Of a stretch of DNA of 64,000 nt, positions 38,624 to 61,945 are shown one piece after another. The DNA lies in IMG/VR virus record IMGVR_UViG_3300020469_003050, positions 278,608 through 342,607 of that record, one strand, 5' to 3'. Numbering within the stretch: the first letter of the stretch is position 1; each line of letters begins with the position of its first letter. The notes below the pieces were generated by a model, which worked only from the letters and a program-made list of their open reading frames with translations, did not search any database and was not told where the DNA came from. A program made the position numbers and the translations under genes.

Positions 38624-38624
38624 A

Positions 38625-38655
38625 AACTTGACAAAATAGCGAATCATGTTATAGT
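38625..38655 (+). promoter_or_regulatory. Sigma70-type promoter with CGAATC spacer element
   Basis: TTGACA(38628)-16-TATAGT; GAATC at 38641. Confidence 0.75.
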
Positions 38656-38685
38656 ATATACATAATCAAAAGAAAGAGGCAGTAA

Positions 38686-39369
38686 ATGTTAAGATTTCTA
38701 AAGATAATGGGTAACGGTTTTGTTACTTTAATGAACATAACTACTATGGCTATATTGGTTGCTTTTGCCGCCTATGCCACTGGTACTACAATCACATCAG
38801 GCGAGGATCAAATACACGATAGTAGCCAAGAAATATATATTCCTGTTCAAGTAAATCCATCATCACGTATTGATATGGAATACTTTCTAATTGATCCTTA
38901 CAAATTTGAACAAGAATTTTGTCTTGCACAAAATATTTTCTTTGAATCAAGTGTTGATAACAAAGCAGGTATGGCGGCAGTTGCAGATGTTGTTCTTAAT
39001 CGTGTAAAACATTCTTATTATCCTAACACTATTTGTGAAGTAGTATATCAAGCTAAAATGAAAGAAAGCTGGAAAACAAAACAGTTTCCTGACTTAGATG
39101 ATAGTGAACGTAAGTATGTTCCAATTCGTCACCGATGTCAGTTTAGTTGGTACTGTGATGGTAAATCTGATGATATACCTTTAGGTTCAGAGAACTGGAT
39201 TAAAGCACAAATGATTGCATGGGATATTATGCACAATGATGGGCTACGAGGTATCACTGAAGGTGCAACACATTATCACGCAACATATGTAAAACCAAAA
39301 TGGGCTAGTCAACATAATATGGACTTAGTTGGTCGAATTGGTCTTCACATTTTTTATCGTTGGAACTAA
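38686..39369 (+). CDS. Cell-wall hydrolase, SleB/Hydrolase_2 family
   Basis: CLAQNIFFE, VADVVLNRV, PNTICEVVYQ, CQFSW, GATHYHA, IGLHIFY. Confidence 0.9.
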   Translation: MLRFLKIMGNGFVTLMNITTMAILVAFAAYATGTTITSGEDQIHDSSQEIYIPVQVNPSSRIDMEYFLIDPYKFEQEFCLAQNIFFESSVDNKAGMAAVADVVLNRVKHSYYPNTICEVVYQAKMKESWKTKQFPDLDDSERKYVPIRHRCQFSWYCDGKSDDIPLGSENWIKAQMIAWDIMHNDGLRGITEGATHYHATYVKPKWASQHNMDLVGRIGLHIFYRWN

Positions 39370-39476
39370 AATAGTTGTTGCAATCTAATGAATTCTGATG
39401 TATACTAATATTAATATCACCGAAATGTGATTAAACTACAATACAATTTTGTCAACTACAGAAGAGGATATATGAA

Positions 39477-39725
39477 GTGGCAAATAAAACACAACGAGGT
39501 CGTAAGCCTCGTAAAATGTCGGCATCGATGGAAGAAGCAGTTAGTCTTCTGAAACCGATGAAAGGTCGTAATGGGCTGTATAGTTGTTTTAGTAAAAACG
39601 ACAACGGCGAGTACACTGAGGTCGGTGTATATAATTACTCAACTAAGAAATATGCAATATTTCGAACTGAGTACGTAGATGGTACAGCCGTCGATGAGAT
39701 TAAAGAAGTTATCAAGGGACTTTAA
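39477..39725 (+). CDS. Hypothetical protein
   Basis: ORF track. Confidence 0.55.
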   Translation: MANKTQRGRKPRKMSASMEEAVSLLKPMKGRNGLYSCFSKNDNGEYTEVGVYNYSTKKYAIFRTEYVDGTAVDEIKEVIKGL

Positions 39726-39755
39726 GTCCTTTGATTACTCTATTAAGGCAGGGAA

Positions 39756-40928
39756 ATGCATATTGAAAATGAAATAAAATTAAACTACGATGATGTTCTA
39801 ATCAGACCTAAACGTAGTACATTAGGATCACGTAAAGCAGTTGACTTAGAACGTGGCTTTAATTTTCCAAATTATAAATCTTATGTAGCAAAAGATGTAT
39901 TGCCAGACGGATATCCTGTAGTTGAAAAACAAGATAAAGATTTTCGTGGTGTTCCTATTATTGCAAGTAATATGGATGGTGTTGGTACATTTGAAATGGC
40001 TGATAAATTAGCTGAACAGAAAATTATGACATGCCTAGTCAAAACATATTCAGTAGATGAACTTGTCAGTTTTTATGATGGTGACATAGATAGTAAAAGA
40101 AAAGATTTTGTAGCATATTCTATGGGCATTACTGAAAATGATGAACAAAAATTTAAAGTAGTATATCAACAAACATCAAATATTAAATATGTTTGCATTG
40201 ATGTAGCAAATGGATATTCAGAAAGATTTATAGACTTTGTAAGAGAGTTTAGAATGAATTATCCTCATGTAGTAATTATTGCAGGTAATGTAGTTACTGC
40301 TGACCAGACACAGGAGTTAATCTTAAATGGAGCAGATATCGTTAAAGTGGGTATTGGTCCTGGCAGTGTTTGTACTACAAGGATACAAACTGGTGTGGGT
40401 TATCCTCAATTATCGGCAGTTATGGAGTGTGCCGATGCCGCTCATGGTCTTAATGGACATATTATTGCTGATGGCGGTTGTACTTGTCCTGGTGATGTAG
40501 CAAAAGCATTTGCCGGCGGAGCAGATTATGTTATGTTAGGTGGAATGTTAGCAGGACATGATGAGGGTGGAGGCAAAATTGTTACTAAACATATTGCAAC
40601 AGGTGGAGCATACAAAACATCTGAAGGAACATTTGTTCCTTATTTCGAAGAACAGAATTTTATTCAGTTTTATGGAATGAGTTCAGATGCGGCTAACACA
40701 AAACATTTTGGTGGTCTTAAAGATTATCGTGCTAGTGAAGGTCGTGAAGTGTTAGTTCCATATAGAGGAAATGTAGAAAACACAATACAGACTATTTTAG
40801 GTGGCATTCGTTCAACTTGCACTTATGCAGGTGCAAAAAGGTTGAAACATTTATCAAAATGTGCTACATTTGTTAGAACAAATAGTCAGTTTAATAGAAC
40901 ATATGAATCAACAACAACAAAAATGTGA
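39756..40928 (+). CDS. guaC: GMP reductase
   Basis: [46 protein letters not shown]. Confidence 0.95.
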
Positions 40929-41191
40929 TGGGTAGATACAGAGTAAACATTGCTAAATCTAATACAGATATAGGGGTAGGGCTTCCATATACTGTCGTAG
41001 CACAGATATTACCAGAAAGTGATGCTGAGGAGTTAGATAATAGCAACGATGTAATTAAGTTGTTTAGAACAGACTTGTCAGGAAGTTATTCACAACAAGA
41101 CATATCTTGTCACATTGATAATTATACAAGAATAGCAACAATACGATTTAGAAACGAAAAGGATTGTGCAGATTTCTTAATGAGGTATTAA
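40925..41191 (+). CDS. Hypothetical protein
   Basis: ORF track. Confidence 0.5.
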   Translation: MMGRYRVNIAKSNTDIGVGLPYTVVAQILPESDAEELDNSNDVIKLFRTDLSGSYSQQDISCHIDNYTRIATIRFRNEKDCADFLMRY

Positions 41192-41539
41192 ATGCTATTT
41201 CAAATATTATTAACCTTAGCATTATTTTTAACAGTTACAACAATCGTATACAGATTAGTAGGGTTTAGAAAAATTATTGAATGTGTCAAAATGTATGGCA
41301 CAAAAAAGTATTGGGTTAACTATAATATCGTAGAGGCGTCAGCCTGGTATGCAAAAGCATTAGTTATTTTGCCTGCATTATTATACGGTATTGAAGTTTG
41401 GCAATTTCATTTTTTAACACTTTTTACAAGCAGTCTTTTAATATGGGCTAGTAGAGAAAAAGGATTACCTACGTTAGTAATCTTTAATACTTTATGGTTA
41501 GGTATTTCTAGTATTGTTATTGTGAGAAATATAATATAG
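41192..41539 (+). CDS. Membrane protein
   Basis: Multiple TMs; LPTLV.FNT.W. Confidence 0.65.
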   Translation: MLFQILLTLALFLTVTTIVYRLVGFRKIIECVKMYGTKKYWVNYNIVEASAWYAKALVILPALLYGIEVWQFHFLTLFTSSLLIWASREKGLPTLVIFNTLWLGISSIVIVRNII

Positions 41540-41550
41540 AAAGGTACACT

Positions 41551-41781
41551 ATGGAGTTTAATGAAGGAATATTCAAAACATTAAAAGAATTAGCATTAAA
41601 AAGCGATTCATTAACACTTGCATTGATTTATACTTGCGGTCATGTCATTATTGCGATGTCAGTTGTTTCAATAATGACAAATGCATCTTTATGGGAAGCA
41701 GGCGCAGTAGCACTTATTGAACCAGCTATTAATGGTGTTTGGTTTTATGTGTTGCACAAACTTTGGAAAAAGTTTGCATGA
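41551..41781 (+). CDS. DUF2061-like small membrane protein (second copy)
   Basis: YT.GH...ALIEP.INGVWFYVLH. Confidence 0.7.
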   Translation: MEFNEGIFKTLKELALKSDSLTLALIYTCGHVIIAMSVVSIMTNASLWEAGAVALIEPAINGVWFYVLHKLWKKFA

Positions 41782-42173
41782 AAATAAATGAATGGGCAGA
41801 CAATTTAAATCTTTTTGATGATGGCAATGAGAGATTGGTCTATCTAATAGAACTTGCAAAAAAATCTACTACACTACCATATGAATTAAGAACTGATGAT
41901 AGACTTGTAGGTGGGTGTATGTCAAAGATTTGGATTGATGTAGGCGTAGTAGAAGATAAAGTAAAAGTGTATTATGATAGTGATGCAATGATTACAAAAG
42001 GTATCACTAGTATTGTTGCAGATTGTTTTTCAGATATACCAGTTGAAGAGGCAAAAGAAATCAAGCATGAAGATTTTCAAAGTTTAAACATTCAACAATT
42101 ATTATCACAACAACGTAGAAATGGATTAGGAAATTTAATTGAAACTATAAGACAAAAGGTACACGTATTATGA
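41778..42173 (+). CDS. sufE: SufE sulfur-acceptor protein
   Basis: YLIELAK, VGGCMSKIW, DSDAMITKG, LSQQRRNG. Confidence 0.9.
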   Translation: MKINEWADNLNLFDDGNERLVYLIELAKKSTTLPYELRTDDRLVGGCMSKIWIDVGVVEDKVKVYYDSDAMITKGITSIVADCFSDIPVEEAKEIKHEDFQSLNIQQLLSQQRRNGLGNLIETIRQKVHVL

Positions 42174-42580
42174 GAATAGGATTTACATGTAGTAGTTTTG
42201 ACTTGTTACACGCAGGTCATACATTAATGCTTGAAGAGGCAAAAGCACAATGCGATTATCTTATTGTAGGATTGCAAACAGACCCTTCAATAGATAGACC
42301 AACAAAGAATAAACCCGTACAGACAGTTGTTGAAAGATATTTACAATTACGTGCATGTAAATACGTAGATGAGATTATTCCATATGGTACTGAACAAGAC
42401 TTAGAAGATATTCTTTCAGGTATGGATATTGATGTAAGGATTTTAGGTGTAGAATATAGAGACAAAGATTTTACAGGTCGTGATATCTGTAAAAAACGTG
42501 AGATAGAAATACATTTTAATGAACGTGACCATAGGTTTAGTTCAAGTGATTTACGTATGAGGGTAACAAAATGCAAATGA
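42170..42580 (+). CDS. Glycerol-3-phosphate cytidylyltransferase-like (TagD family)
   Basis: FDLLHAGH, LIVGL, YVDEII, FSSS. Confidence 0.85.
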   Translation: MRIGFTCSSFDLLHAGHTLMLEEAKAQCDYLIVGLQTDPSIDRPTKNKPVQTVVERYLQLRACKYVDEIIPYGTEQDLEDILSGMDIDVRILGVEYRDKDFTGRDICKKREIEIHFNERDHRFSSSDLRMRVTKCK

Positions 42581-42900
42581 ATTTATGGGAAATTGATGGG
42601 CAGATAGTAAAGGAAGACGATAGATACGTAGTAAAAGATAATACTTTACTAAAAAATTTAATAGTTAGTTCAACTACATTACATTCAGGTAAATCTACCA
42701 GTGGACATAAACATGAAGGACAAGAAGAAGTTTATATGTTTTTAAAAGGTCATGGTACTATGGAACTTGATGATAAAGAATTACATGTCATTGAAGGTGA
42801 TTGTGTACTGATTGAAGATGGTGTTTTTCATCGTGTACATAATAACGGTTCGGGTGATTTGTATTTTGTATGTGTATTTGATGGCGGGCGAAATCATTAA
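42571..42900 (+). CDS. Cupin-domain protein
   Basis: HKHEGQEEVY...G.G, FHRVHN. Confidence 0.85.
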   Translation: MQMNLWEIDGQIVKEDDRYVVKDNTLLKNLIVSSTTLHSGKSTSGHKHEGQEEVYMFLKGHGTMELDDKELHVIEGDCVLIEDGVFHRVHNNGSGDLYFVCVFDGGRNH

Positions 42901-43058
42901 TGAAAATACTCTTAGTTGTGATGATATTATTAGTCAGTGCTTGTGCCACACCTAAGACAGAAAAAGAAAAGAAGGACAGAACAACATTACAAGTAATTAA
43001 AATTATAGGATGTGTTGTTGCTCCTCATATACCAGTATGTATAACACCAGGTAAGTAA
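42900..43058 (+). CDS. Small lipoprotein (52 aa)
   Basis: MKILLVVMILLVSAC lipobox; TAATG overlap. Confidence 0.55.
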   Translation: MKILLVVMILLVSACATPKTEKEKKDRTTLQVIKIIGCVVAPHIPVCITPGK

Positions 43059-43059
43059 G

Positions 43060-44007
43060 ATGAATATATTTGTAAACTATGAAGCAGGGTCAGGTGGTGA
43101 CTTTTTAAAAATAGCATTGTGGTTTTTATTGAATCCAGAGATTAAAGTAGATTGGAAAAATTTAGATAATATGGATATCCCAATCTTCAATTATTGTAAC
43201 GAACCTGTAGACGGTCTTAAGATAACTGTAACACATGAACCTTATGGTGAATATCTACTATGTTCATTAATGGACGATGGGTCTGTAAAACCTAGTACAG
43301 TTTTAGCTGGTCACGATATAATTGATTTCGGTACGTCTTATCAAAATCAAGTTAGAAATATTCGTGTACATGAAATAGCAATGCTTTATGCTGATGTAAA
43401 TAATATAACAAAGAAAGAAGCACTTGTTAGATTATCAAGGGCACAGGTAAAAAATCAACCACGTAAAGTGAAAGAAGCTATTAAGAAAAGGAATTTTGAA
43501 CATACAGTTTTAGGCGGACATTGGAGTTTTAGTGTAGGGTCAAGGTTAGAAGATATAAATGAATTTTATAAAAGTGTTGTAGGCAAAACATTTAATAGGG
43601 TTATAACTATATTACCTAGTAAACCAAGTGAGCAAATTATGATAAGACACTTGGACTACATTAAAAATAATGGAGTAGAAAATAGACAAGTAATAAATGA
43701 TTCATATAATAACTTAAGAAATATGATTGAGTTGATGAGAAATTATACAACTGCAAAAGAAATGTCTAAACATTATGGTTATAATATAATAACATTTAGT
43801 GAATTGCATTGCTCAAGTGCATTAGACTTGGCAAAAAAGTTAGCAACACACATAGAAGGAATAAAGGTTAATGAGACTTATTTAGAGTTTCATAAAAGAT
43901 ATTCAGAGTTAAACAATATACCATCACTATTAAAGAGTAATAAACTAAAAATATGTGATGATGTAATTGGTAGCTTTATGAAGGAGGTAGACGAATGGGT
44001 ATTATAA
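43060..44007 (+). CDS. Hypothetical protein (possibly sulfotransferase-like fold)
   Basis: N-terminal YEAGSGGDFL. Confidence 0.45.
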   Translation: MNIFVNYEAGSGGDFLKIALWFLLNPEIKVDWKNLDNMDIPIFNYCNEPVDGLKITVTHEPYGEYLLCSLMDDGSVKPSTVLAGHDIIDFGTSYQNQVRNIRVHEIAMLYADVNNITKKEALVRLSRAQVKNQPRKVKEAIKKRNFEHTVLGGHWSFSVGSRLEDINEFYKSVVGKTFNRVITILPSKPSEQIMIRHLDYIKNNGVENRQVINDSYNNLRNMIELMRNYTTAKEMSKHYGYNIITFSELHCSSALDLAKKLATHIEGIKVNETYLEFHKRYSELNNIPSLLKSNKLKICDDVIGSFMKEVDEWVL

Positions 44008-44780
44008 AAGAAAAAGTTTTAGAAGTAAAACATTACACAGACAAGTTGATGCATTTTAAAACTACACGTGCTCCTGGAACTAGATTCCGTGATGGAGAAT
44101 TTTTAATGATTGGATTAGATAATTGGTCAGAGAAGTTACAAAAGAATAAACCAATTATGAGAGCATATTCAGTTGCATCACCAAACTATGAAGAATACAT
44201 GGAATGGTTCTCAATTAAGGTACCAAATGGACCATTAACAAGTAGATTACAACATATAAAACCAGGTGACGAAATACTTGTTAATGATAAATCAGTTGGT
44301 ACATTAGTTATGCCAAATCTAAAACCTGGCAGAAATTTATATCTACTTGCTACTGGTACTGGTGTTGCACCATTTATGAGTTTAGTAAGGGGAATAGAAA
44401 CATACGAAGACTTTGATAATGTAATCTTGGTATGGGGAACTAGAACAGTAAAAGAACTTGCATATAAAGAATTTTTGGAAGGGTTGAATGAACATGAGAT
44501 ATGGGGAGAAATAACTCAAGGTAAGTTTAAATTTTATCCTACAGTGACACGTGAAGAATTCGAAAACACAGGCAGAGTAACAACTGCTATGTATGAAAAC
44601 AAAGTACAAGATAAATTAGGATTACCTAAATTAGATAAAGAACACGATAGAGTTATGATATGTGGCTCAATGCCAATGAATGTTGAATTGAAAGAATACT
44701 TAGAAGGATTAGGTTTCGAAGAAGGAAGTAATAGAGTCCAAGGCGAGTATGTATTAGAGAAAGCATTTGTAGAGAAATGA
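43995..44780 (+). CDS. fpr: Ferredoxin-NADP+ reductase (bacterial subclass I)
   Basis: RAYSVAS, GPLTSRL, TGTGVAPF, VTRE, MICGS, EKAFVEK. Confidence 0.95.
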   Translation: MGIIKEKVLEVKHYTDKLMHFKTTRAPGTRFRDGEFLMIGLDNWSEKLQKNKPIMRAYSVASPNYEEYMEWFSIKVPNGPLTSRLQHIKPGDEILVNDKSVGTLVMPNLKPGRNLYLLATGTGVAPFMSLVRGIETYEDFDNVILVWGTRTVKELAYKEFLEGLNEHEIWGEITQGKFKFYPTVTREEFENTGRVTTAMYENKVQDKLGLPKLDKEHDRVMICGSMPMNVELKEYLEGLGFEEGSNRVQGEYVLEKAFVEK

Positions 44781-44813
44781 TAAGTACATACATTAGAAAG
44801 GATAAAAGGACTT

Positions 44814-45056
44814 ATGAAAGCAACAGTATACAGTAAAAACGCATGTGGGTATTGCGTACAAGCAAAGAATTTATTAAAAATGAAGGGTATCGACATTACA
44901 GAATATAATATACAATTAGACAACGATGCCCGTGTAAAGCTATTTGAAGAATGTAGTAAGATTAATGTAGTTCCAAGAACCGCACCTCAAATATGGTTAG
45001 ACGATGAATACATCGGTGGTTTCCATGAATTACAGAAACATTTTGAAAATGCATGA
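44814..45056 (+). CDS. Glutaredoxin
   Basis: CGYC, TAPQI, IGGF. Confidence 0.9.
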   Translation: MKATVYSKNACGYCVQAKNLLKMKGIDITEYNIQLDNDARVKLFEECSKINVVPRTAPQIWLDDEYIGGFHELQKHFENA

Positions 45057-45672
45057 TTATACTTTCTTAACAGGTGCACCAGGATCAAGATGGTCTGGTG
45101 TTGCACAAATCATTTCAGAGAACTTCAATTATAACAATTCAGATGAAACAGACTGGAGAGTTTACAAGCATGGAGAATTCTCAGGTCATAGAGGAGCCTA
45201 TTGGGGTCCACATATGGAATTAGGGCAAAACTTTCATAGTCTTGAAAGAAATTACAATAATGATATCATAGGATTTAAGAAAGCATGTGATGTGGGATTT
45301 ATAGAACCCATTTCAGCAAAACCAAAGATGATTAAGTGTCACCAATTTGCTTACGGTTTAGATTGGTTAAATCAAAATATAGAAAATTCACAGATACTAA
45401 TAGTCAAAAGAGGAAACCAAGAATGCTTTGATTGGTGGCATGAAGCAGGTGGTTGGAATATATACTATCCAAAATATACATGGTATGTAGATGATAATCA
45501 TATGATGCATTATATTGAAGCAGAAAATAAACTATTAAATGAATTCGTTAAAAGAAATGGTGAATGGGAAGATTTCAATGAAGAATGGTTAACAGAAGAA
45601 TATGGTGAACATAATATTGAAATCGACAAAGACAAATATAGTGACGTAAAGGTTTGCCTAATTAAAACTTGA
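45049..45672 (+). CDS. Sulfotransferase-like P-loop protein
   Basis: FLTGAPGSRWSGV, IKCH, LIVKR. Confidence 0.5.
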   Translation: MHDYTFLTGAPGSRWSGVAQIISENFNYNNSDETDWRVYKHGEFSGHRGAYWGPHMELGQNFHSLERNYNNDIIGFKKACDVGFIEPISAKPKMIKCHQFAYGLDWLNQNIENSQILIVKRGNQECFDWWHEAGGWNIYYPKYTWYVDDNHMMHYIEAENKLLNEFVKRNGEWEDFNEEWLTEEYGEHNIEIDKDKYSDVKVCLIKT

Positions 45673-45719
45673 CATTATACAAAAAGGTGCTATATTAATA
45701 TATAATTACAAGGAGTATT

Positions 45720-46052
45720 ATGTACGAGTTCGAAAATGACGATATGATAGATGTTGAAGGTGTTGAACTTCAAGGGTATGTATCTACAACATACCAAAGA
45801 TTAGTTGACACATTTGGCGATCCTACTATAGGTAGTGATATGTCTGATGCTGAATGGGTCTTACAATTCAAAGTACCTCATGATACTGAGGGGTATAGCG
45901 AAGAAGTTGATTACATTGCGGCAACTATACACAAAATAGATGAGTGGGATGAAGATAACATTCCTGATGGAATATATAAATGGCATGTAAGTGGTTTCGA
46001 TGAGGAAGCACTTGATTGTGTCAAGGAAGTATTAGGCGAAGAAGATGAGTAA
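45720..46052 (+). CDS. Acidic hypothetical protein
   Basis: LQGYV.TTY..LV..FGDP; promoter TTGACA(45669)-16-TATATT. Confidence 0.65.
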   Translation: MYEFENDDMIDVEGVELQGYVSTTYQRLVDTFGDPTIGSDMSDAEWVLQFKVPHDTEGYSEEVDYIAATIHKIDEWDEDNIPDGIYKWHVSGFDEEALDCVKEVLGEEDE

Positions 46053-46224
46053 AAAGAAAGCACATTTTTTATATCTTATTGACCATCCTGATGGCAATAA
46101 CGAAATGAAATTAATGACAGAATCAGAAGCGAAACATTATGCGTTGATACATGAAAGAGAAGTCTGGAATGTTCATAGTTCAATGGATTTAGAACCTGAT
46201 ATGCTTGAGCCTCAAAAACTATAA
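46045..46224 (+). CDS. Hypothetical protein (59 aa)
   Basis: Open frame overlapping previous stop. Confidence 0.45.
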   Translation: MSKKKAHFLYLIDHPDGNNEMKLMTESEAKHYALIHEREVWNVHSSMDLEPDMLEPQKL

Positions 46225-46274
46225 TATACAATATATTGTAAGTAAATTAATCCACAAATTGTAGTAAATACTTA

Positions 46275-53731: not shown

Positions 53732-53732
53732 A

Positions 53733-54395: not shown

Positions 54396-54918
54396 CGGTC
54401 TTAAAGACCAGTATGGAAGAATCGTATATAATCGACAAGATTTATACGAAATGCTTTATAATGGCGAAGACATATCTAAAGTCACTGAAATGGAGTGGCA
54501 TGATGATATTGAAAAGTACAATAAAGCATTATCATTAAATAATGTTGAAAAAGACTTGATTGAACCCATACAGAAATTATCTAAGGAAATAACTGAATTT
54601 GATGATGAAAATCAGAAAGAATGGTTTATACCAGATGAATATAAAAACTTAGACATTTGGAAGTATGTATTAGATAAATGTCCTGATGATTTGCCCGAAA
54701 TGAACAGAACATGCAATGAGTTATATTTATATGATAAATACGGTATAATAGACGTACTTAAAGTGTGTGTCTATATTGTTGATACTCTACGTAAACATAA
54801 TATTATATGGGGTGTTGGCAGAGGCAGTAGTGTTTCAAGTTATGTGTTATACTTATTGGGTATACACAAAGTTGATAGCATTAAGTATGAATTGGATATA
54901 AATGAGTTTTTAAAATGA
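54364..54918 (+). CDS. DNA polymerase III alpha (DnaE)-like stand-alone fragment
   Basis: WGVGRGSSVSSYVLYLLGIHKVD...Y.L..EFL. Confidence 0.75.
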   Translation: MAGNLKSSKIDGLKDQYGRIVYNRQDLYEMLYNGEDISKVTEMEWHDDIEKYNKALSLNNVEKDLIEPIQKLSKEITEFDDENQKEWFIPDEYKNLDIWKYVLDKCPDDLPEMNRTCNELYLYDKYGIIDVLKVCVYIVDTLRKHNIIWGVGRGSSVSSYVLYLLGIHKVDSIKYELDINEFLK

Positions 54919-55139
54919 CAAATGATACTATAGTTAAATTTCCAAACAGTAAACGTTGTTTAACGTCTGATGAGGAACGTCTAGTAAAAAGTACAACGAA
55001 CATTATACATAATTCATATCAACATACTAATCCTTTCGTTAAATCAAACGATAGGACAAATTTTGTTGAACTGCAAATTAAAACTTTACTAAGAAAAGTT
55101 TTTGAAATTAACGAAGATACAAACGAGGATATACGATGA
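54915..55139 (+). CDS. Hypothetical protein
   Basis: ORF track. Confidence 0.5.
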   Translation: MTNDTIVKFPNSKRCLTSDEERLVKSTTNIIHNSYQHTNPFVKSNDRTNFVELQIKTLLRKVFEINEDTNEDIR

Positions 55140-55579
55140 AACAATATAAAAGTATGCGTGGCGTAAGTATAGACCTTGCTAAACTGATGGCAAAATCTGA
55201 AAAGAATATTTCTGTAGGAAATACTCAGACAAATGCCAGAGGAGACCAATTAGGTCGTGGAGGCAGAGTTGTAAAAAGTGCTGATGCAATAGCACGTGAA
55301 CACTATAACGTAAACAATCCACGTGCAGTAGTTAAGTCTTCTATAAAAGTTGATAATGATGTTGATGCATCAGGCAAGGAAGAGGCTGTAAAGAAAGAGC
55401 CTGTCAAACAAACAGAGGATGATTGGGTAGAACCAACTCCTACAAAAGAAGAACCCAAAGAAGAAGTTAAAGAAACTGAACCTGTAACTCAGGAAGCAGA
55501 AGACGATGATTGGGTTGAAGACGAAAACGGAGACTTTGTAAGAAAGTCTGAAACTAAAAAAACTAAAAAAAAGAAATAG
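55136..55579 (+). CDS. Hypothetical phage protein
   Basis: YKSMRG..ID, VGN..TNARGD.LG.GG; acidic tail. Confidence 0.65.
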   Translation: MKQYKSMRGVSIDLAKLMAKSEKNISVGNTQTNARGDQLGRGGRVVKSADAIAREHYNVNNPRAVVKSSIKVDNDVDASGKEEAVKKEPVKQTEDDWVEPTPTKEEPKEEVKETEPVTQEAEDDDWVEDENGDFVRKSETKKTKKKK

Positions 55580-55597
55580 CTTAAGGGGGCTAAAATT

Positions 55598-55795
55598 ATG
55601 AGAACAATGTTGGCGATTTTTGCATTGGCAATATTAACAGGATGTAGCGGAAACGTTACTCCACCAGAAGTAAAATTGGGTAAAAAGTGTATGACAAATA
55701 ATGACGGTACAGTAGTTTACTCATATGTTTGGATCCATAAAAAAGGAACTGAACTAGAAGCAGACAACGAAACTTGTAAATTGATAGAGGATTAA
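55598..55795 (+). CDS. Small lipoprotein
   Basis: Lipobox LTGC. Confidence 0.65.
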   Translation: MRTMLAIFALAILTGCSGNVTPPEVKLGKKCMTNNDGTVVYSYVWIHKKGTELEADNETCKLIED

Positions 55796-55796
55796 A

Positions 55797-56120
55797 ATGG
55801 CACAACTAAGACCGTTGGGAGACCGAATTCTATTAAAGAATTTGGATAAAGGGGAAAAGACAACAAAGGGTGGAATCATCGTTCCAGATGATTCACAAAT
55901 GTCCGCAGGTGAACGTGGCATCAGACCACGTTGGGCTCAAATCTATGCAGTAGGACCTAGACAAGAATCTGTACAAGCAGGTCAATGGGTTCTTATGGAA
56001 CATGCAAGATGGACAGAAGCACATAAAGTAGAAATCGATGGTGTAGAAACTGAGATTTGGATGGGTGATCCAGAAGGTATGTTAGGAACAAGTGAGACAA
56101 AGCCAGACGATGTAGCTTAG
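55797..56120 (+). CDS. groES: Co-chaperonin GroES-like
   Basis: LRPLGDRILL, TKGGIIVP, AVGP, G.WVL. Confidence 0.85.
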   Translation: MAQLRPLGDRILLKNLDKGEKTTKGGIIVPDDSQMSAGERGIRPRWAQIYAVGPRQESVQAGQWVLMEHARWTEAHKVEIDGVETEIWMGDPEGMLGTSETKPDDVA

Positions 56121-56122
56121 AC

Positions 56123-57736
56123 ATGCAACCTTTATTGGATATTTTTTATCTAACATATAAGAATGATTTTTCACAAGATAACTTTGACAGACTAAAAGAG
56201 AAGTCAGGGTACCCTCAACGTGTGGTCAATGTAGCAGACATTGATGGCATCTATAATGCACATAAAGAATGTGCAAGACAATCAAAAACAGAACACTTTT
56301 TTGTAGTAGACGGTGATGCTTGGATTACCGATGATTTTGATTTTTCTTATATACCTAGTACAACTGATGAAGTATATCCAGAAACATGTTCTGCACAATG
56401 TACACATGTTTGGAGAGCAATTAACCCTGCTACAGGAAAAACATATGGGTACGGTGGCGTGAAGTTATTTGCTAGAGAGGCATTCTTTGATAAAGCATGG
56501 GGGTATGAACAGTTTCCAGGTGTAGATGTAACATCGGAAGTTGCAAGACGAGGCTTTCCATATTTACCAATAGAAGAAATATCCAATGAAACACGTTTCA
56601 ATACAACTGCCTTTAATGCTTGGAAAGGTGCATTTAGAGAAAGCACTAAACTTGCAAGTGGTATTGCTACACAAGATAGAAGACAGAAATTATCAGAGTG
56701 GAAGAACCCATTAGAAGATGTAGGTTTTCGTGCAGAAATCTTATCAGGTTCTATCATGGGAGAAAACTACGGTACTGTAAATGTAGGTAAAGGTGATAAG
56801 TTACACAGAATTAATAATTGGAAATGGTTGAACACTTGGTTCAAACAAAGAAAGAATTGGAAACCACAGCCTATAGTTGAATTCGATACAACATACCCTG
56901 ATGGTAGATATATGCTAAATGGTATTCAACGATATGCTGAATGGGTAAATCATCCAGATGCAGATGATATAGATTTGATGCGACTTGCAGTTATGGATTC
57001 TAATAAAGACCATCAACAAAATATTTATAATGCAGTTGAAAAACTTATATGGGATAAGAAATATAAGTCAGAAAATTTACAAATGTTTTTACAATATCTT
57101 TATAGTGGATCGAAGAACAGATTCAATCCAGAAAGATGTGTACATTTCATGTTTGAATACTTTGGAAGTGAACAAGATCCTTATTTTGGTATGTTGATGG
57201 GTGCAGTAAAAGAAGCACCAGATTGTAACTACATTGATGCTCATTCTAATTATCAAGTAGAAAGTAAAATATGGTTAATAGAAAATTTAATAAAACTAGA
57301 CACTAGATTTAAAGATGCAGTATTTGTAGGTGGTTGGTTAGGTATATCAAGTTTTTGGTCAGTTAAGAAAAACGTAATGCATAAAGTAACTAATATAGAT
57401 GTTGATGAACAAGCAATAAAATTTAGTAAAGCATTGAACAAGTATAATGATACATACACAGGTTTAGTAGCAGATGCAAATAGTTATGATTATGATAAGC
57501 ATGATTTAGTTATTAATACAAGTGCAGAGCATATGACAGAAGAATGGTTTAATAAAATTAAGCCAGGTACTACAGTAGCAATACAAACAAACGATTTTCA
57601 TGAAATAGACGAACACATAAACACAGTTAAGGACTTGACAGAGTTAGAGAAAAAGTATACTATGTCTAAAGTACTATTCTTAGGAACTAAGGATTGCGAT
57701 AGGTATAATAGATTTATGTTAATAGGTATAAAATAA
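56123..57736 (+). CDS. Glycosyltransferase-like / methyltransferase-like fusion
   Basis: GIYNAHKECA...FFVVDGD and YGYGGVKL; C-terminal VGGWLG, IDVD, INTSAEHM. Confidence 0.65.
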   Translation: MQPLLDIFYLTYKNDFSQDNFDRLKEKSGYPQRVVNVADIDGIYNAHKECARQSKTEHFFVVDGDAWITDDFDFSYIPSTTDEVYPETCSAQCTHVWRAINPATGKTYGYGGVKLFAREAFFDKAWGYEQFPGVDVTSEVARRGFPYLPIEEISNETRFNTTAFNAWKGAFRESTKLASGIATQDRRQKLSEWKNPLEDVGFRAEILSGSIMGENYGTVNVGKGDKLHRINNWKWLNTWFKQRKNWKPQPIVEFDTTYPDGRYMLNGIQRYAEWVNHPDADDIDLMRLAVMDSNKDHQQNIYNAVEKLIWDKKYKSENLQMFLQYLYSGSKNRFNPERCVHFMFEYFGSEQDPYFGMLMGAVKEAPDCNYIDAHSNYQVESKIWLIENLIKLDTRFKDAVFVGGWLGISSFWSVKKNVMHKVTNIDVDEQAIKFSKALNKYNDTYTGLVADANSYDYDKHDLVINTSAEHMTEEWFNKIKPGTTVAIQTNDFHEIDEHINTVKDLTELEKKYTMSKVLFLGTKDCDRYNRFMLIGIK

Positions 57737-58632
57737 TGAAAGCGATTTACATAATTGCGTATCACGGACATCGTGCTAATACAGAGACAAGGCAGAAAAG
57801 AAGTGATAATCATAATAAACAAATAGATTGGTGGTTAAATTATGATAAAGAAATTGAAATTAGAATACTCGCTATGGACTTTGATGAAGTTGAGTATTGG
57901 GATAACGATAGGGTTCATTATATTGACAGGCTTGATGTTCCTACTCCTCCTGCAAGTGCAAGAAATATATTATTCAATCACTTCTATGACACCGGAGATG
58001 AGTGGGCTATTTTTGCAGATAGCGATGCAATTCTTAATCTTCACCCTAATTTCCCTCACACTCATATCAACATTTGTGATATCTTTCGTAAAAGTCCGGG
58101 AAAGTTTAAAGACATTACGTTATTCGCACCGCACAACGACCAAAGACCGGGTGATGGGGCGTTTTATGACAAGTTTAATGGAGTAGATAACGATTACAAA
58201 GATGTAGACTGGAATACAGAGTTTGTATTCGATAGAAAACTTACTCATATGAAAGGTACACTTTTCTTTCTTAGAAACAATAAAGAAAGATTAATGATGG
58301 ACGAATACTTCAATGTTCATCCATGGGGTACGAAACCTATACTAGGTGGTGAAGACGATGAATTTATTATGTCATGTGTGATGGCAAATAAAGGAACATA
58401 TATGTTACGTAACATTATGTTAAAAGAAATGACTGCTGGATCAACTTGGAGCGATACAGAAACACGCAAAGACGATGAAAAGATGCGTGATGATTATATT
58501 GCAAAGAAGTATAATTTACCAAGTGACAAAGCCAAATGGACGCAGATAATCAAAAAAGAAAGAACTGGTTATCCAAAGCAGTTGCGTATTAACCCTAACC
58601 AAGCAGATGCCTTTGGTAGTCTGTTTGATTAA
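57736..58632 (+). CDS. GT-A glycosyltransferase-like protein
   Basis: ASARN, IFADSD (DxD), GGEDDEF. Confidence 0.65.
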   Translation: MKAIYIIAYHGHRANTETRQKRSDNHNKQIDWWLNYDKEIEIRILAMDFDEVEYWDNDRVHYIDRLDVPTPPASARNILFNHFYDTGDEWAIFADSDAILNLHPNFPHTHINICDIFRKSPGKFKDITLFAPHNDQRPGDGAFYDKFNGVDNDYKDVDWNTEFVFDRKLTHMKGTLFFLRNNKERLMMDEYFNVHPWGTKPILGGEDDEFIMSCVMANKGTYMLRNIMLKEMTAGSTWSDTETRKDDEKMRDDYIAKKYNLPSDKAKWTQIIKKERTGYPKQLRINPNQADAFGSLFD

Positions 58633-58643
58633 TGAGATAGATT

Positions 58644-59126
58644 GTGAAAATTGTAAAAGATAAAATCAATGATTATTTTAGATGGGTCAAAGGAACAGAA
58701 TTAGTAGAGTTAGATGATATAGATGTATCCGAAGATCCAGTTAGGCCTGAGTTAACTTTGGGCTGGCGAATTACAAATGGGCGTAAAATTTACGGATTAC
58801 AATACGAGAATAATATTGAAGCAATTATTTGTATTGCATATACGAATGACGTTCCAACAAGTGTAAGAGAATTAGATATGATGAGTGAACTTGCATATTT
58901 AAAAAAAGATGAAAAAGTTGCTATTGCATATACAGTATGGTCAAGAAAAAGAGGTGCTGGTAAAGAGATAGTTAACAAAATGATTTCTTATGCTAAAGAT
59001 AGAGGAATCAATAGAGTGGTTACATTATCTCCTCTCACACCAATGGCTACACACTTTCATATCAGTAATGGTGCAAAGCAAATTGGTATCAACGACAATA
59101 CTCAGAATTTCGAATACACTACATAA
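58644..59126 (+). CDS. GNAT-like protein
   Basis: YTVWSRKRGAGK, VTLSP.T.MA.HFH..NGA. Confidence 0.55.
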   Translation: MKIVKDKINDYFRWVKGTELVELDDIDVSEDPVRPELTLGWRITNGRKIYGLQYENNIEAIICIAYTNDVPTSVRELDMMSELAYLKKDEKVAIAYTVWSRKRGAGKEIVNKMISYAKDRGINRVVTLSPLTPMATHFHISNGAKQIGINDNTQNFEYTT

Positions 59127-59156
59127 ACTTGACAGATTCACGAATCGTGTTATAGT
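59126..59156 (+). promoter_or_regulatory. Sigma70-type promoter with two GANTC sites
   Basis: TTGACA(59129)-GATTCACGAATCGTGT-TATAGT. Confidence 0.8.
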
Positions 59157-59238
59157 ATATACATACTGCGAAGAAAAATCACAATAATCTACGCACTTAA
59201 TCCTAAGAATATCCGATAAATATTGATGAGAGAGAAAT

Positions 59239-59670
59239 ATGTACTATTCTATAAAAGGCGGGAAAAAGTCAGAGAAAGAATTGGTAATAAAGGCCTTATG
59301 GTTTGCCAAGGATTATCTTCTACCTCGACACAAGCATATAGAAGTAGATATCGAACTCAAAAAGAATATCAAATGTGATGCTGATGTAGTTAGCGGTGAC
59401 GAATATCGTGAATATATCATGCGAATTAGACGAGGTCTTAAAGAAGACGATATTCTAACTAGTGTTTTCCACGAATTTGTTCATATTAAGCAAGATGTAC
59501 GAAAAGAACACCCATTATTTGAGTGTTCAGATACTCCATATTTAGAACGTGCATGGGAAGTGGAAGCATTTGACTTACAAGAAACTATGCTCACTGCTTA
59601 TCGTAAGGAAGAAAAGCAGGTCGCGGCTAAAAAATCCAAGAAATTAAAAGCAAAAAACTTGACAAAATAG
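59239..59670 (+). CDS. HEXXH zinc-metallopeptidase-like protein
   Basis: FHEFVHIKQ...PY..RAWEVEA. Confidence 0.75.
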   Translation: MYYSIKGGKKSEKELVIKALWFAKDYLLPRHKHIEVDIELKKNIKCDADVVSGDEYREYIMRIRRGLKEDDILTSVFHEFVHIKQDVRKEHPLFECSDTPYLERAWEVEAFDLQETMLTAYRKEEKQVAAKKSKKLKAKNLTK

Positions 59671-59710
59671 CATTTAGTGTTATTATATATACATAATCAG
59701 GAGAAAATGT

Positions 59711-60850
59711 ATGCAAAATATCACAAGTTTAGCAAGTCTATATAAGAGAGATACAAAAGGCAAATTAAGAATTTGGACTGTAGAATACGGTTTTGATTCT
59801 GATGATGTTGCTGGTACTAGAACTATTGCCGGATTAATTGATGGCCAGAAAGTCACTAGCGAATGGAATTTATCTATTGCTAAAAATGTTGGTAAAGCAA
59901 ACGGAACAACTGCTAAGACCCAAGCTATCTCAGAAGCACAATCTAGTTGGGACCAAAAAGCAGATAAAGAATATTTTGAAAACATAGATGATGTTGATAG
60001 TTACGAACTATTCAAACCTATGTTAGCTAATGATTTTACAAAGAAGCCAGTTACTAGCGGTTACACACAACCGAAACTAGATGGTATCAGATGTTTAGTT
60101 AATAAACATGGTATGAATTCAAGAAGTGGTAAGCCTATTAATAGTTGTCCTCATATTGCAGAGGCATTAGAAAACTTTGTTAAAGATTATCCTAATATTA
60201 CACTTGACGGTGAACTATACAATCACGAACTTAAATCAGATTTTCAAAAGATTGTTTCACTTGTTAGAAAAGTAAAGTGTAGACCAGAAGAAATAGCCGA
60301 GAGTGCAGAATTAGTTGAGTATCACATTTATGATATGTTTGATGCCGATAATCCTGATATGCCTTTCATTGATAGAATGTATTTCTTAGTAAAGCATTTA
60401 CCAGTAGAAGGTAATTACCTTGACGGTCTTGGTAAGATTGTTATTGTTGAAACTGCTAAAACTGATACTACTGCCGATATCGATAAGATGTATGGTGAGT
60501 ACACAGAAGCAGGTTATGAAGGTCAAATGGTAAGACAAAATTCTGCTTACGAATGTAAGAGAAGTAAAAATCTTTTAAAGAGAAAAGAATTCATTACAGA
60601 AGAATTTAAAGTAGTAAGTGTTGAAGAAGGAAATGGTAACTGGTCAGGTTATGCAAAAAGATTTAATCTTCAACTTTCTAATGGTACTCAGTTTAGTTCA
60701 GGTATCAGAGGTTCACAAGCAAAACTAAAAGAACTTCTAAATGCTGAAACTCCTAATTGGGCTACTTGTAGATACTTTGAATTATCAAATGATGGTATTC
60801 CAAGATTTCCAGTTGTTATCGATTATGGATATGGCGAACGTGACGATTAA
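59711..60850 (+). CDS. ATP-dependent DNA ligase
   Basis: PMLA, PKLDGIR, LDGELY, YDM, EGQMVR, LLKRK, PRFP; promoter TTGACA(59659)-16-TATTAT. Confidence 0.93.
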   Translation: MQNITSLASLYKRDTKGKLRIWTVEYGFDSDDVAGTRTIAGLIDGQKVTSEWNLSIAKNVGKANGTTAKTQAISEAQSSWDQKADKEYFENIDDVDSYELFKPMLANDFTKKPVTSGYTQPKLDGIRCLVNKHGMNSRSGKPINSCPHIAEALENFVKDYPNITLDGELYNHELKSDFQKIVSLVRKVKCRPEEIAESAELVEYHIYDMFDADNPDMPFIDRMYFLVKHLPVEGNYLDGLGKIVIVETAKTDTTADIDKMYGEYTEAGYEGQMVRQNSAYECKRSKNLLKRKEFITEEFKVVSVEEGNGNWSGYAKRFNLQLSNGTQFSSGIRGSQAKLKELLNAETPNWATCRYFELSNDGIPRFPVVIDYGYGERDD

Positions 60851-61703
60851 CATAGAATTAACATCTACTGGTCTTAAATCATATATCGACACAAAGTACT
60901 TTGACGATAGTGAAAAGGTAATGGTGGATCATATGAGAAATGATGATTCACTGTCTGACTCATTTAGTATAAACCAACTTGGATATACATTAGACAGATT
61001 TTTAAATTTTGGTTATACTAAAAACTCTTACGGTTTCAGAGATTACAAAAACAGAGAATATGAATTAGAAAATTCTGAAAATGAAATATGGTGTTTTGGT
61101 TGTAGTTGGACTGAAGGTATGGGTGTACCTGCTGAATATTCTTGGCCTGCTCGTATTGAACAAGAAACAGGAATTACTGTAAAGAATTTTGGTGTAGGTG
61201 GTGGGGGTCCTTTTACTGCACACAGAATAATGAAAGCATGGTTAGAGAATGCGACATATAAACCTAGTAAAATATATATGTTAGGTTGGTGGCCTGGTAG
61301 ATTTGAATACAGATTTAACGACAAATACATTTTGATTCATGCTAGACTTTTAGCTGATGGACATGAACTTTCTAAAATTCATGGAGTAGGTAAAAAAGAT
61401 TATAGACAAATACAAGATGAGTTTTTATCACTCAATAACTATAATGAAATTAATAATAACATAAAAGAATTATGTAATTATCATAATGTAGAAACAAAAC
61501 GATTATCCAATATCATAGATAAAAACTTTTCAGATGATTGGGATAGTAAAATGCTTATGGCCTTAAAGATAAAACAATCTGATTTTAAAGATTTATCACA
61601 CCTAAAAGATTGGGGCAGGGACGTAAATAACATTAGTAATCCTACGTGTCACCCTGGAATAAAATACCAAGATATTATCGCAAAAACGTTCTTAAAAACT
61701 TGA
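60831..61703 (+). CDS. SGNH-hydrolase-like phage protein
   Basis: NSYGFR, FGCSWTEGMGV, NFGVGG, HPG; start uncertain. Confidence 0.6.
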   Translation: MANVTINIELTSTGLKSYIDTKYFDDSEKVMVDHMRNDDSLSDSFSINQLGYTLDRFLNFGYTKNSYGFRDYKNREYELENSENEIWCFGCSWTEGMGVPAEYSWPARIEQETGITVKNFGVGGGGPFTAHRIMKAWLENATYKPSKIYMLGWWPGRFEYRFNDKYILIHARLLADGHELSKIHGVGKKDYRQIQDEFLSLNNYNEINNNIKELCNYHNVETKRLSNIIDKNFSDDWDSKMLMALKIKQSDFKDLSHLKDWGRDVNNISNPTCHPGIKYQDIIAKTFLKT

Positions 61704-61727
61704 CAAATCCCCGAATCGTGTTATATT
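61697..61727 (+). promoter_or_regulatory. Sigma70-type promoter with CGAATC
   Basis: TTGACA(61700)-16-TATATT; GAATC at 61713. Confidence 0.8.
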
Positions 61728-61752
61728 AAATACATAATCAAGAGAGAGAAAA

Positions 61753-61914
61753 ATGATAGAACAATACGAAAACGAAATCAAAAAGTTAGAAAAATATCTA
61801 ACTACTTTTGCTGGTAACACTTCATCAGTAAAAATGAAAAAGTATGCGATTGAAAAAAAGATCCAAACATACAAAGATATTGTTAACGAAATGAAGTTAA
61901 TACTTGCTATATAA
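61753..61914 (+). CDS. Small hypothetical protein (53 aa)
   Basis: Between two promoters, GAGAGAG RBS. Confidence 0.55.
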   Translation: MIEQYENEIKKLEKYLTTFAGNTSSVKMKKYAIEKKIQTYKDIVNEMKLILAI

Positions 61915-61945
61915 AACTTGACAATATCACGAATCGTGCTATATT
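61915..61945 (+). promoter_or_regulatory. Sigma70-type promoter with CGAATC
   Basis: TTGACA(61918)-16-TATATT; GAATC at 61931. Confidence 0.8.

What the first reader, a model, noticed from the sequence alone, without database searches (positions are those of the whole stretch)
38625..61945. Early promoter class with CGAATC (CcrM GANTC / GcrA-type site) at a fixed spacer position
Seen: promoters at 38628, 59129, 61700 and 61918 share AAACTTGACA-N6-CGAATC(G/A)TG(T/C)-TATA(G/T)T with a 16-nt spacer, and GAATC starts at exactly the 8th spacer base in all four. The promoter at 6203 also has CGAATCA, and 59129 has a second GATTC. Several share a downstream ACATAATCA-GA-rich leader. Established: GANTC is the alphaproteobacterial CcrM m6A site, and GcrA binds sigma70 and methylated YGAKTCK-like sites; CGATTCG and TGATTCG, the reverse complements here, both fit. 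Inference: the phage couples early transcription to host CcrM methylation/GcrA (or its own homologs), a possible epigenetic or cell-cycle sensing switch.
Basis: partly seen in the sequence, partly recalled or inferred. Interest (0 to 1): 0.75.

Follow-up and report, generated by a model that had tools for sequence, protein, structure and literature searches.

The report
Phage promoters carrying a GcrA-type box
A marine giant phage, and an unrelated small phage, use near-perfect bacterial promoters that all carry the same short sequence, at the spot where the alphaproteobacterial regulator GcrA reads methylated DNA, so these phages may link their first genes to the host's DNA-methylation system.

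Summary
The window is the end of a 342,607-bp marine jumbo myovirus. It has about 20 promoters, all on the + strand, built as A-tract, AACTTGACA, six variable bases, (C/A)GA(A/T)TC, RTGY and TATAnT.

- **Selection:** the box is better conserved (0.86 pairwise identity) than the -10 hexamer (0.76). The six bases beside it have drifted (0.44).
- **Spread:** the class occurs in over 100 viral contigs, in two unrelated phage families: the jumbo family and a ~31-kb family whose capsid resembles cultured SAR11 phages.
- **Match to GcrA:** 123 of 128 distinct boxes fit the published GcrA motif YGAKTCK on one strand. The centre lies at about -19, where GcrA sites peak and its DNA-binding domain can dock.
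- **Host hints:** an alphaproteobacterial-type tmRNA, and SAR11-like genomes that carry both GcrA and a CcrM-type methylase.

Against it, the host is unproven. The phages encode no methylase and no GcrA. Cultured SAR11 and OM43 phages lack the box. The promoters are already consensus. GANTC depletion sits among strong general restriction-site avoidance. No methylation or GcrA dependence was tested.

Verdict: a selected promoter element, most likely read by a host factor, with GcrA/CcrM as the best candidate (about 0.45).

The parts
38622..38668 (+). Promoter with box. A-tract and AAC at 38622-38627; -35 TTGACA at 38628-38633; box CGAATC at 38640-38645; ATGT at 38646-38649 (extended -10 TG); -10 TATAGT at 38650-38655; leader ATATACATAATCA at 38656-38668. 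It drives ORF 38686-39369, an endolysin-like protein of 227 aa.
59123..59170 (+). Promoter with box. -35 at 59129-59134; extra GATTC at 59135-59139 (centre about -26); box CGAATC at 59141-59146, forming the 11-bp palindrome CACGAATCGTG; -10 TATAGT at 59151-59156. It drives ORF 59239-59670.
61694..61740 (+). Promoter with box. -35 at 61700-61705; box CGAATC at 61712-61717; -10 TATATT at 61722-61727. It drives the small ORF 61753-61914.
61912..61976 (+). Promoter with box. -35 at 61918-61923; box CGAATC at 61930-61935; -10 TATATT at 61940-61945; a second AGAATCA at 61968-61974 (about +20). It drives ORF 61977-62300. This is the most deeply covered non-tRNA stretch in the marine metatranscriptome contigs.
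59653..59700 (+). Class member that lacks the box. It has the same A-tract, -35 (59659-59664), GTGT, -10 TATTAT (59681-59686) and ATATACATAATCA leader, but CATTTAG in place of CGAATCG. It is a natural box-minus control.
45663..45700 (+). Class member that lacks the box: AAAACTTGACA-TTATACAAAAAGGTGC-TATATT.
6203..6231 (+). Variant promoter. TTGACT, a 17-nt spacer, CGAATCA at 6213-6219 in a different register (7 nt before the -10), then TGC-TATATT. It lies directly upstream of a manA RNA motif (6254-6452).
2560..2882 (+). Alphaproteobacterial-type permuted (two-piece) tmRNA with tag ANDNYQPEMAMAA. It serves as a clue to the host lineage.

Best explanation
These are strong promoters for the host sigma-70 RNA polymerase. 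They combine an A-tract, a consensus -35 hexamer, a 16-bp spacer and an extended -10 element, and they drive non-structural, probably early, genes. They carry one extra selected element, (C/A)GA(A/T)TC at -22 to -17.

The most likely reader of that element is a host factor bound to RNA polymerase. The best candidate is GcrA, a sigma-70 cofactor that recognises GANTC sites methylated on adenine by the host enzyme CcrM. On this reading the box gives the phage promoter an extra contact that speeds open-complex formation and helps it outcompete host promoters. Promoter activity then depends on the methylation left on the phage DNA by the previous host.

**Shown:** the architecture, the selective conservation of the box, its presence in two unrelated phage families, and its sequence and position match to published GcrA sites.

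**Inferred:** an alphaproteobacterial (SAR11-like) host, methylation of the sites, binding by GcrA, activation, and early timing.
For: 1. **The box is selected, not just inherited.** Within this genome its pairwise identity is 0.86, against 0.44 for the adjacent six spacer bases and 0.29-0.31 for the flanks. In relatives scanned without requiring GANTC, 13 of 17 promoters carry it in register. In the pooled set, 125 of 157 distinct promoters have it centred at -19 and 9 at -20. That pooled set is biased, because most relatives' loci were fetched with a pattern that required GANTC.
2. **Motif match.** The heptamers are CGAATCG 65, CGAATCA 28, AGAATCA 15, AGAATCG 8, CGATTCG 6, TGATTCG 1, AGATTCG 4 and GGATTCG 1. 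That makes 123 of 128 fitting YGAKTCK on one strand. CGAATCA is the reverse complement of TGATTCG, the GcrA consensus and the crystallised site.
3. **Position match.** GcrA-regulon sites peak narrowly at -20 and again from +2 to +30, and the DNA-binding domain fits at -20 +/- 1. Minor clusters of GANTC here lie at +21 (7 promoters) and -26 (13 promoters).
4. **A host-encoded reader is favoured.** The same cassette, up to 96% identical over 54 nt, is used by an unrelated ~31-kb phage family. That family shares no detectable regulator with the jumbo phage; the only protein similarity is generic tail-fibre motifs.
5. **Host clues.** The window encodes an alpha-type tmRNA. The small family's capsid is 58-60% identical to those of cultured SAR11 phages. 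Small low-GC alphaproteobacterial genomes carry GcrA and a CcrM-sized N6_N4 methylase. The literature says SAR11 has CcrM (PMC3973325).
6. **A native precedent.** The thrS promoters of at least 7 sampled Alphaproteobacteria have GANTC at the identical register after CTTGACA.
7. **Genome-wide GANTC.** It is under-represented (observed/expected 0.66, also 0.67 in relative G001) and 1.6-fold enriched in intergenic DNA. CcrM-bearing genomes show the same pattern.
Against: - The host is not identified. The nearest phage tmRNA is that of Melnitz, which infects OM43, a non-alphaproteobacterial host; whether OM43 carries GcrA or CcrM was not checked here.
- Cultured SAR11 phages (HTVC008M and the HTVC111P group), Melnitz, and the Rhizobiales jumbo phages Phosso and Atu_ph07 lack the box.
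- The phages encode no methylase. Virion DNA would therefore have to be methylated by host CcrM during a lytic burst.
- The promoters are already consensus and should not need an activator.
- The centre base is always A or T, and A outnumbers T by 116 to 12. This is narrower than CcrM specificity. Depletion concerns GAWTC (0.60) more than GASTC (0.88), amid far stronger avoidance of other restriction sites: GCWGC 0 of 104 expected, GATC 0.25.
- The purine after the box belongs to the generic RTG extended -10 element, so it does not count independently towards the motif match.
- No register preference for GANTC before TATAAT was seen in five SAR11-like genomes.
- The transcription start is predicted, not mapped.
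Confidence: 0.45

Rival explanations
1. The box is an operator for a phage-encoded DNA-binding protein. One example would be a repressor that shuts early promoters off, sitting between -35 and -10 on a promoter that needs no activation.
For: The promoters are already consensus, and sites in the spacer are the classic position for a repressor. The core CGAWTCG is a 7-bp dyad, extended to the 11-bp CACGAATCGTG in a subset. The box is specific to these lineages and absent from other phages of SAR11 and OM43.
Against: Two unrelated phage families use the identical box yet share no detectable regulator gene. The dyad is short, and its 3' half overlaps the generic RTG element. A outnumbers T at the centre by 116 to 12, which argues for asymmetric rather than dimeric reading.
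Confidence: 0.2
2. The box is read by the host transcription machinery itself, or by another unidentified host factor. It could be a lineage-specific spacer element that strengthens promoters, independent of methylation and of GcrA.
For: The box is shared by unrelated phages, which points to the host. G004, a third lineage of 158 kb, has the same scaffold TTGACAAAT-N7-RTGnTATAAT with A/T-rich words (GAATTC, AAATTT, AAATCT) at the same place and GATTC in 2 of 16 promoters. This suggests a looser preference near -20.
Against: I know of no base-specific contact of RNA polymerase at -22 to -17 (own knowledge). The exact identity to the GcrA heptamer, at the GcrA position, would then be coincidence. 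By my own estimate 16 of 16,384 heptamers fit the motif on either strand.
Confidence: 0.2
3. The box has no function of its own. It rides along in a promoter-plus-leader cassette that spreads by duplication and by recombination between co-infecting phages.
For: The cassette, leader included, is up to 96% identical between unrelated phages. Many copies sit in arrays of small genes.
Against: Neighbouring spacer bases have diverged to 0.44 identity while the box stays at 0.86, above the -10 hexamer. The box persists across family members whose genomes are only 68-75% identical in nucleotides, or 51-65% in amino acids. A-to-T changes at the centre keep GANTC intact.
Confidence: 0.07

Closest known systems
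GcrA-activated, CcrM-methylated sigma-70 promoters of Caulobacter and other Alphaproteobacteria (for example mipZ, ctrA P1)
   Same: Both have a GANTC with YGAKTCK flanks centred about 20 bp upstream of the start, between -35 and -10 of a sigma-70 promoter, sometimes with a second site downstream.
   Different: Here the sites are in phage DNA, on promoters that are already consensus. They occur in about 20 near-identical copies per genome, and the centre base is restricted to A or T. Methylation and GcrA dependence are untested, and the host is unknown.
CtrA-box control of phage genes in Alphaproteobacteria (phiCbK, vB_BsubS-Delta; PMC9437464)
   Same: Both are cases of a phage wiring its transcription to a host cell-cycle regulator.
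   Different: The regulator and the site differ (TTAA-N7-TTAA for CtrA). That study scanned phage genomes for GcrA sites and found no positional signal.
Phage-encoded GcrA (phiCbK) and CcrM-like methylases (Sinorhizobium phages)
   Same: Both are phage interactions with the GcrA/CcrM module.
   Different: This phage and its relatives encode neither protein. They would exploit the host's copies through cis sites only.
T4 MotA-dependent middle promoters
   Same: Both are a phage promoter class defined by an extra conserved box.
   Different: The MotA box replaces the -35 element at about -30 and needs phage MotA and AsiA (own knowledge). Here the -35 is a perfect TTGACA and the box lies at -20.
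Mobile promoter cassettes of T4-type phages (PeSL elements; own knowledge, not checked here)
   Same: Both are repeated early-promoter modules in front of small genes, shared between genomes.
   Different: Here the cassette crosses between unrelated phage families and carries a GANTC box. A stem-loop component was not examined.

Membership tests
GcrA/CcrM-dependent sigma-70 promoter | A GANTC site in the promoter | tested here: met
   GA(A/T)TC lies at a fixed register in about 20 promoters of this genome and in 125 of 157 pooled distinct promoters.
GcrA/CcrM-dependent sigma-70 promoter | Flanks fit the extended GcrA motif YGAKTCK | tested here: met
   123 of 128 distinct boxes fit on one strand (motif). 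The 3' purine may, however, be owed to the generic RTG extended -10 element.
GcrA/CcrM-dependent sigma-70 promoter | Site centred near -20 (or at +2 to +30) relative to the transcription start | tested here: inconclusive
   The centre is at -19 if the -10 hexamer spans -12 to -7. The start site is predicted, not mapped. Metatranscriptome contigs break at the repeated promoter and give no start.
GcrA/CcrM-dependent sigma-70 promoter | The host encodes GcrA and CcrM | tested here: inconclusive
   The host is not identified. The alpha-type tmRNA and the kinship of the second phage family to SAR11 phages point to Alphaproteobacteria. SAR11-like genomes carry both genes. The tmRNA is nearest to that of an OM43 phage.
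GcrA/CcrM-dependent sigma-70 promoter | Adenines of the site carry N6-methylation | not testable with these tools
   No methylation calling is available. The phages encode no N6_N4 or Dam-class methylase.
GcrA/CcrM-dependent sigma-70 promoter | Transcription depends on GcrA | not testable with these tools
   The complex-prediction job for a GcrA DNA-binding domain with promoter DNA was not folded by the tool.
Extended -10 sigma-70 promoter | TTGACA, a 16-18 bp spacer, TGn and TATAAT | tested here: met
   11 of 12 hexamer matches with TG in all four window promoters.
T4 MotA-type middle promoter | A MotA box at about -30 in place of the -35 element | tested here: not met
   The -35 hexamer is invariant TTGACA and the box lies at -22 to -17.
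Repressor operator | A dyad-symmetric site plus a cognate phage repressor | tested here: inconclusive
   Only a 7-bp dyad (CGAWTCG), 11 bp in a subset. The two phage families share no regulator.

The most novel reading that the evidence does not exclude
The box acts as an epigenetic timer. Fully methylated parental DNA, marked by the previous host's CcrM, fires these promoters through GcrA bound to sigma-70. The phage has no methylase, so replication turns the sites hemi-methylated and then unmethylated. That switches the early class off without any phage repressor. The same device is shared, as a mobile cassette, by a jumbo phage and a small phage of SAR11-like bacteria. It would also make this the first jumbo phage assigned to that host group.
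Probability: 0.12. Interest if true: 0.85.

Novelty: new variant of a known kind. Interest (0 to 1): 0.66.

Why it matters
If the box is read by GcrA on CcrM-methylated DNA, it would be the first phage promoter class found to use the alphaproteobacterial methylation-reading cofactor. A published scan of alphaproteobacterial phages for GcrA sites found nothing.

It would tie infection by globally distributed marine phages to the host's replication and methylation state. These phages are present in marine metagenomes and viromes from many studies.

It also gives a simple, testable model for switching early genes off without a repressor. The genome supplies natural box-minus controls at 45669 and 59659.

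A 6-bp element is conserved more tightly than the -10 hexamer and is shared by unrelated phages. That marks an unrecognised promoter determinant in an abundant, poorly studied group of marine hosts.

Tried and rejected
- **Low GC as evidence against an alphaproteobacterial host:** rejected. Relatives with 33-38% GC infect Pseudomonas and Agrobacterium, and the window encodes an alpha-type tmRNA.
- **Host from the TctA transporter gene:** best bacterial matches were 35% identity or less, which is uninformative.
- **Cultured relatives:** Phosso, Atu_ph07, PA5oct, HTVC008M, Melnitz and four HTVC111P-type phages have no box at this register.
- the pattern had one N too many and should be ignored.
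- **Transcription starts from metatranscriptomes:** only assembled contigs were available, and they break at the repeated promoter. Depth is highest downstream of 61918, but this is not proof of a start.
- **T4-type late promoter TATAAATA as a timing contrast:** only 9 upstream hits and no clear class.
- **Register of GANTC before TATAAT in five SAR11-like genomes:** counts were at or below the reversed-pattern control in the three lowest-GC genomes, and no preferred gap was evident among the listed matches (inspected by eye, not tabulated).
- **Tail-fibre similarity between the two phage families as proof of a shared host:** the shared segments are generic fibre motifs, so the evidence is weak.
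- **GANTC depletion as specific evidence for CcrM:** weakened by much stronger avoidance of many other restriction sites.
- **Enrichment of the promoter pattern in Alphaproteobacteria (59 hits against 25):** the control was the reversed pattern, not a shifted register. It shows promoter-likeness more than a preference for this register.


Full report
**What the window is.** The window is bases 278,608-342,607 of a 342,607-bp IMG/VR virus record with terminal repeats and 34.8% GC. Its portal is T4-like. The nearest cultured phages by portal are Sinorhizobium phage Phosso (54%), Pseudomonas phage PA5oct (52%) and Agrobacterium phage Atu_ph07 (52%), followed by Rak2-like enterobacterial jumbo phages. 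The sequence occurs at near identity in marine metagenomes and viromes from many studies, and partly in marine metatranscriptomes.

**The observation.** All four promoters are as described. TTGACA-N6-CGAATC gave 4 hits against 0.22 expected, and 0 of 100 shuffles reached 4. Each has a 16-nt spacer with GAATC starting at the 8th spacer base, then (G/A)TG(T/C) and TATA(G/T)T, with the leader ATATACATAATCA after it. The 6203 promoter has CGAATCA but in another register.

Across the genome I count about 20 members, all on the + strand. Their genome coordinates are 36189, 48160, 48882, 80842, 88555, 116260, 117030, 119023, 120198, 125183, 127558, 167640, 168652, 169063, 235432, 236948, 317235, 337736, 340307 and 340525. 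Five promoters with the same -35 and -10 frame lack the box, including window 45669 and 59659. The genes downstream are non-structural: a MoxR-type AAA ATPase, a DUF2201/VWA protein, an FG-GAP protein, a polysaccharide lyase, a helicase, an endolysin-like protein and many small ORFs. An early or middle class is therefore plausible but not shown.

**The box is under selection.** Among 18 exact-register copies in this genome, mean pairwise identity is:

| Segment | Mean pairwise identity |
|---|---|
| -35 hexamer | 1.0 |
| Box | 0.86 |
| -10 hexamer | 0.76 |
| RTGY | 0.71 |
| Leader | 0.58 |
| First six spacer bases | 0.44 |
| Flanks | 0.29-0.31 |

Most of these loci are 68-100% nucleotide relatives of this genome.

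In five relatives scanned without any requirement on the spacer, 13 of 17 promoters carry GANTC in register. Pooling this genome with the relatives' loci gives 157 distinct promoters. GANTC is centred at -19 in 125, at -20 in 9, additionally at -26 in 13, and at +21 in 7. The pooled numbers are biased upward, because the loci were fetched with a GANTC pattern. The within-genome and numbers are not.

**What the box looks like.** The heptamers are CGAATCG 65, CGAATCA 28, AGAATCA 15, AGAATCG 8, CGATTCG 6, AGATTCG 4, TGATTCG 1 and GGATTCG 1. The centre is always A or T, and A outnumbers T by 116 to 12.

The purine and TG that follow are not specific to this class. Pelagibacter phage HTVC008M, OM43 phage Melnitz and G004, an unrelated 158-kb phage, all have TTGAC-N16/17-RTGnTATAAT without a conserved GANTC. 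The add-on specific to these lineages is therefore the hexamer (C/A)GA(A/T)TC.

**Comparison with GcrA and CcrM.** Haakonsen et al. (PMC4647560) give TGATTCG, more broadly YGAKTCK, as the GcrA motif. They report that methylation sites of the GcrA regulon lie 'narrowly centered around -20' and from +2 to +30. Wu et al. (PMC5887438) crystallised the DNA-binding domain on TGATTCG. They found that it fits the major groove at -20 +/- 1 and -30 +/- 2 without clashing with RNA polymerase.

Here 123 of 128 boxes fit YGAKTCK on one strand. CGAATCA is the reverse complement of TGATTCG. With the -10 hexamer at -12 to -7, the box centre is -19.

As a native precedent, I scanned 401 sampled Alphaproteobacteria for TTGAC-N8-GANTC-N4-TANNNT. 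The scan gave 59 hits against 25 for the reversed pattern. At least seven of the hits are the promoter of the threonyl-tRNA synthetase gene, CTTGACAG-N5-C(C/G)GAWTC(G/C)C.

**A second, unrelated phage family.** Twenty of the loci share nothing with this genome except the promoter cassette. They belong to a family typified by G411, a 31,352-bp record that CheckV rates 100% complete. It has an HK97-type capsid, a tape measure and a tail-fibre J-like protein.

Its four promoters all carry the box. They drive the only + strand module, which holds small genes and a GNAT acetyltransferase; the structural genes run on the other strand. The cassette is up to 96% identical over 54 nt to copies in the jumbo genome. 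The only protein similarity between the two families is a set of generic tail-fibre motifs.

Two unrelated phages using the same box without a shared regulator points to a reader supplied by the host. A more distant member, G415, has AGATCT or CGATTT at the box register in three of five promoters.

**Host.** The host is not identified. Several clues point to Alphaproteobacteria of the SAR11 type:
- The window encodes a permuted alpha-type tmRNA at 122.6 bits.
- G411's capsid and terminase are 58-60% and 46-48% identical to those of cultured Pelagibacter phages HTVC111P, 202P, 026P and 112P, which have the same genome size.
- Gonzalez et al. state that SAR11 has a CcrM homolog.
- Genomes of 1.1-1.2 Mb with 25-32% GC in the alphaproteobacterial sample carry GcrA, and G116, G124 and G125 a CcrM-sized N6_N4 methylase.

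The tally includes G050, an unpublished genome. No claim here rests on it.

Other clues point elsewhere, or nowhere:
- The nearest phage tmRNA is that of Melnitz, which infects OM43, although its authors derive that gene from the SAR11 lineage.
- The cultured SAR11 and OM43 phages lack the box.
- Phosso, Atu_ph07 and PA5oct lack it too.

**Methylation source and GANTC statistics.** No GcrA, N6_N4 methylase or Dam-class methylase is encoded by this phage or by the relatives searched. Any methylation must therefore come from the host.

GANTC is under-represented, with observed/expected 0.66, second lowest of 16 comparable words. The value is 0.67 in relative G001, against 0.84-1.15 in Atu_ph07, Phosso, PA5oct and G004. 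It is also 1.6-fold enriched in intergenic DNA. This resembles the pattern described for CcrM-bearing genomes.

The genome, however, avoids many restriction sites far more strongly: GCWGC 0 against 104 expected, GATC 0.25, AAGCTT 0 of 26, TGATCA 0 of 19. In addition, the depletion is in GAWTC (0.60) rather than GASTC (0.88). I therefore give this line little weight.

**Assessment.** The element is real, selected, and most simply read by a host factor at promoters bound by RNA polymerase. GcrA on CcrM-methylated DNA is the only known system that matches in both sequence and position, and I put it at about 0.45. The rivals are a phage-encoded operator protein (0.2), another host determinant or an intrinsic spacer element (0.2), and passive hitch-hiking in a mobile cassette (0.07). 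The remainder is unassigned. No methylation, binding, start-site or timing data could be obtained with these tools.

Noticed in passing
window 2560-2882: A phage-encoded permuted (two-piece) alphaproteobacterial-type tmRNA with tag ANDNYQPEMAMAA. The nearest phage copy is in OM43 phage Melnitz (77.6% over about half its length; Melnitz tag ANDNYVPVDYALAA).
   Followed up: partly
window 6254-6452: A manA RNA motif (Rfam RF01745, 59.8 bits) lies directly downstream of the variant promoter at 6203.
   Followed up: no
window 18981-20489: A TctA-family tricarboxylate transporter gene (292.6 bits) lies in a 41% GC patch of a 35% GC genome. The best bacterial matches are only 35% identical or less.
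   Followed up: partly
whole genome (G000): Extreme restriction-site avoidance: GCWGC 0 against 104 expected, GATC 0.25, CGCG 0.27, AAGCTT 0 of 26, TGATCA 0 of 19, GCTAGC 1 of 21, TCTAGA 6 of 71.
   Followed up: partly
L290+L291 (G411, IMGVR_UViG_3300030118_002715): A complete ~31-kb phage, structurally related to cultured SAR11 phages of the HTVC111P type, carries the same promoter-plus-leader cassette as the jumbo phage. Its small-gene + strand module has no homologs in the jumbo genome.
   Followed up: yes
L021 (G415) promoters at record 5048, 5340, 5725: In a distant relative of G411, the box register holds AGATCT (which contains GATC) or CGATTT instead of CGAATC. This may be a switch of box in another host or lineage.
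   Followed up: no
L278-L280, L284, L285, L288, L289: The threonyl-tRNA synthetase promoters of at least seven sampled Alphaproteobacteria share CTTGACAG-N5-C(C/G)GAWTC(G/C)C, with GANTC at the same register as in the phage. I found no mention of thrS in the GcrA papers that I searched.
   Followed up: partly
genome 82069 and 90543 (L119); window 22942: A second promoter class, TTGACTT...TATAAT, has its -35 hexamer in the loop of a hairpin followed by a T-run (for example GGGAGAGAGGTCTTGACTTCTCTCCTTTTTTTTGTTATAAT). This looks like a combined terminator and promoter.
   Followed up: no
window 63034-63567: A tRNA cluster: Leu(TAA), Glu(TTC) and Arg(TCT). It is the most deeply covered stretch in the metatranscriptome contigs, but conserved tRNA sequences of other organisms may contribute to that depth.
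   Followed up: no
L262-L269 (G004, 158,507 bp, terminal repeats): A third, unrelated marine phage has 16 promoters of the form TTGACAAAT-N7-RTGnTATAAT, with A/T-rich words (GAATTC, AAATTT) at the box position and GATTC in only two.
   Followed up: partly
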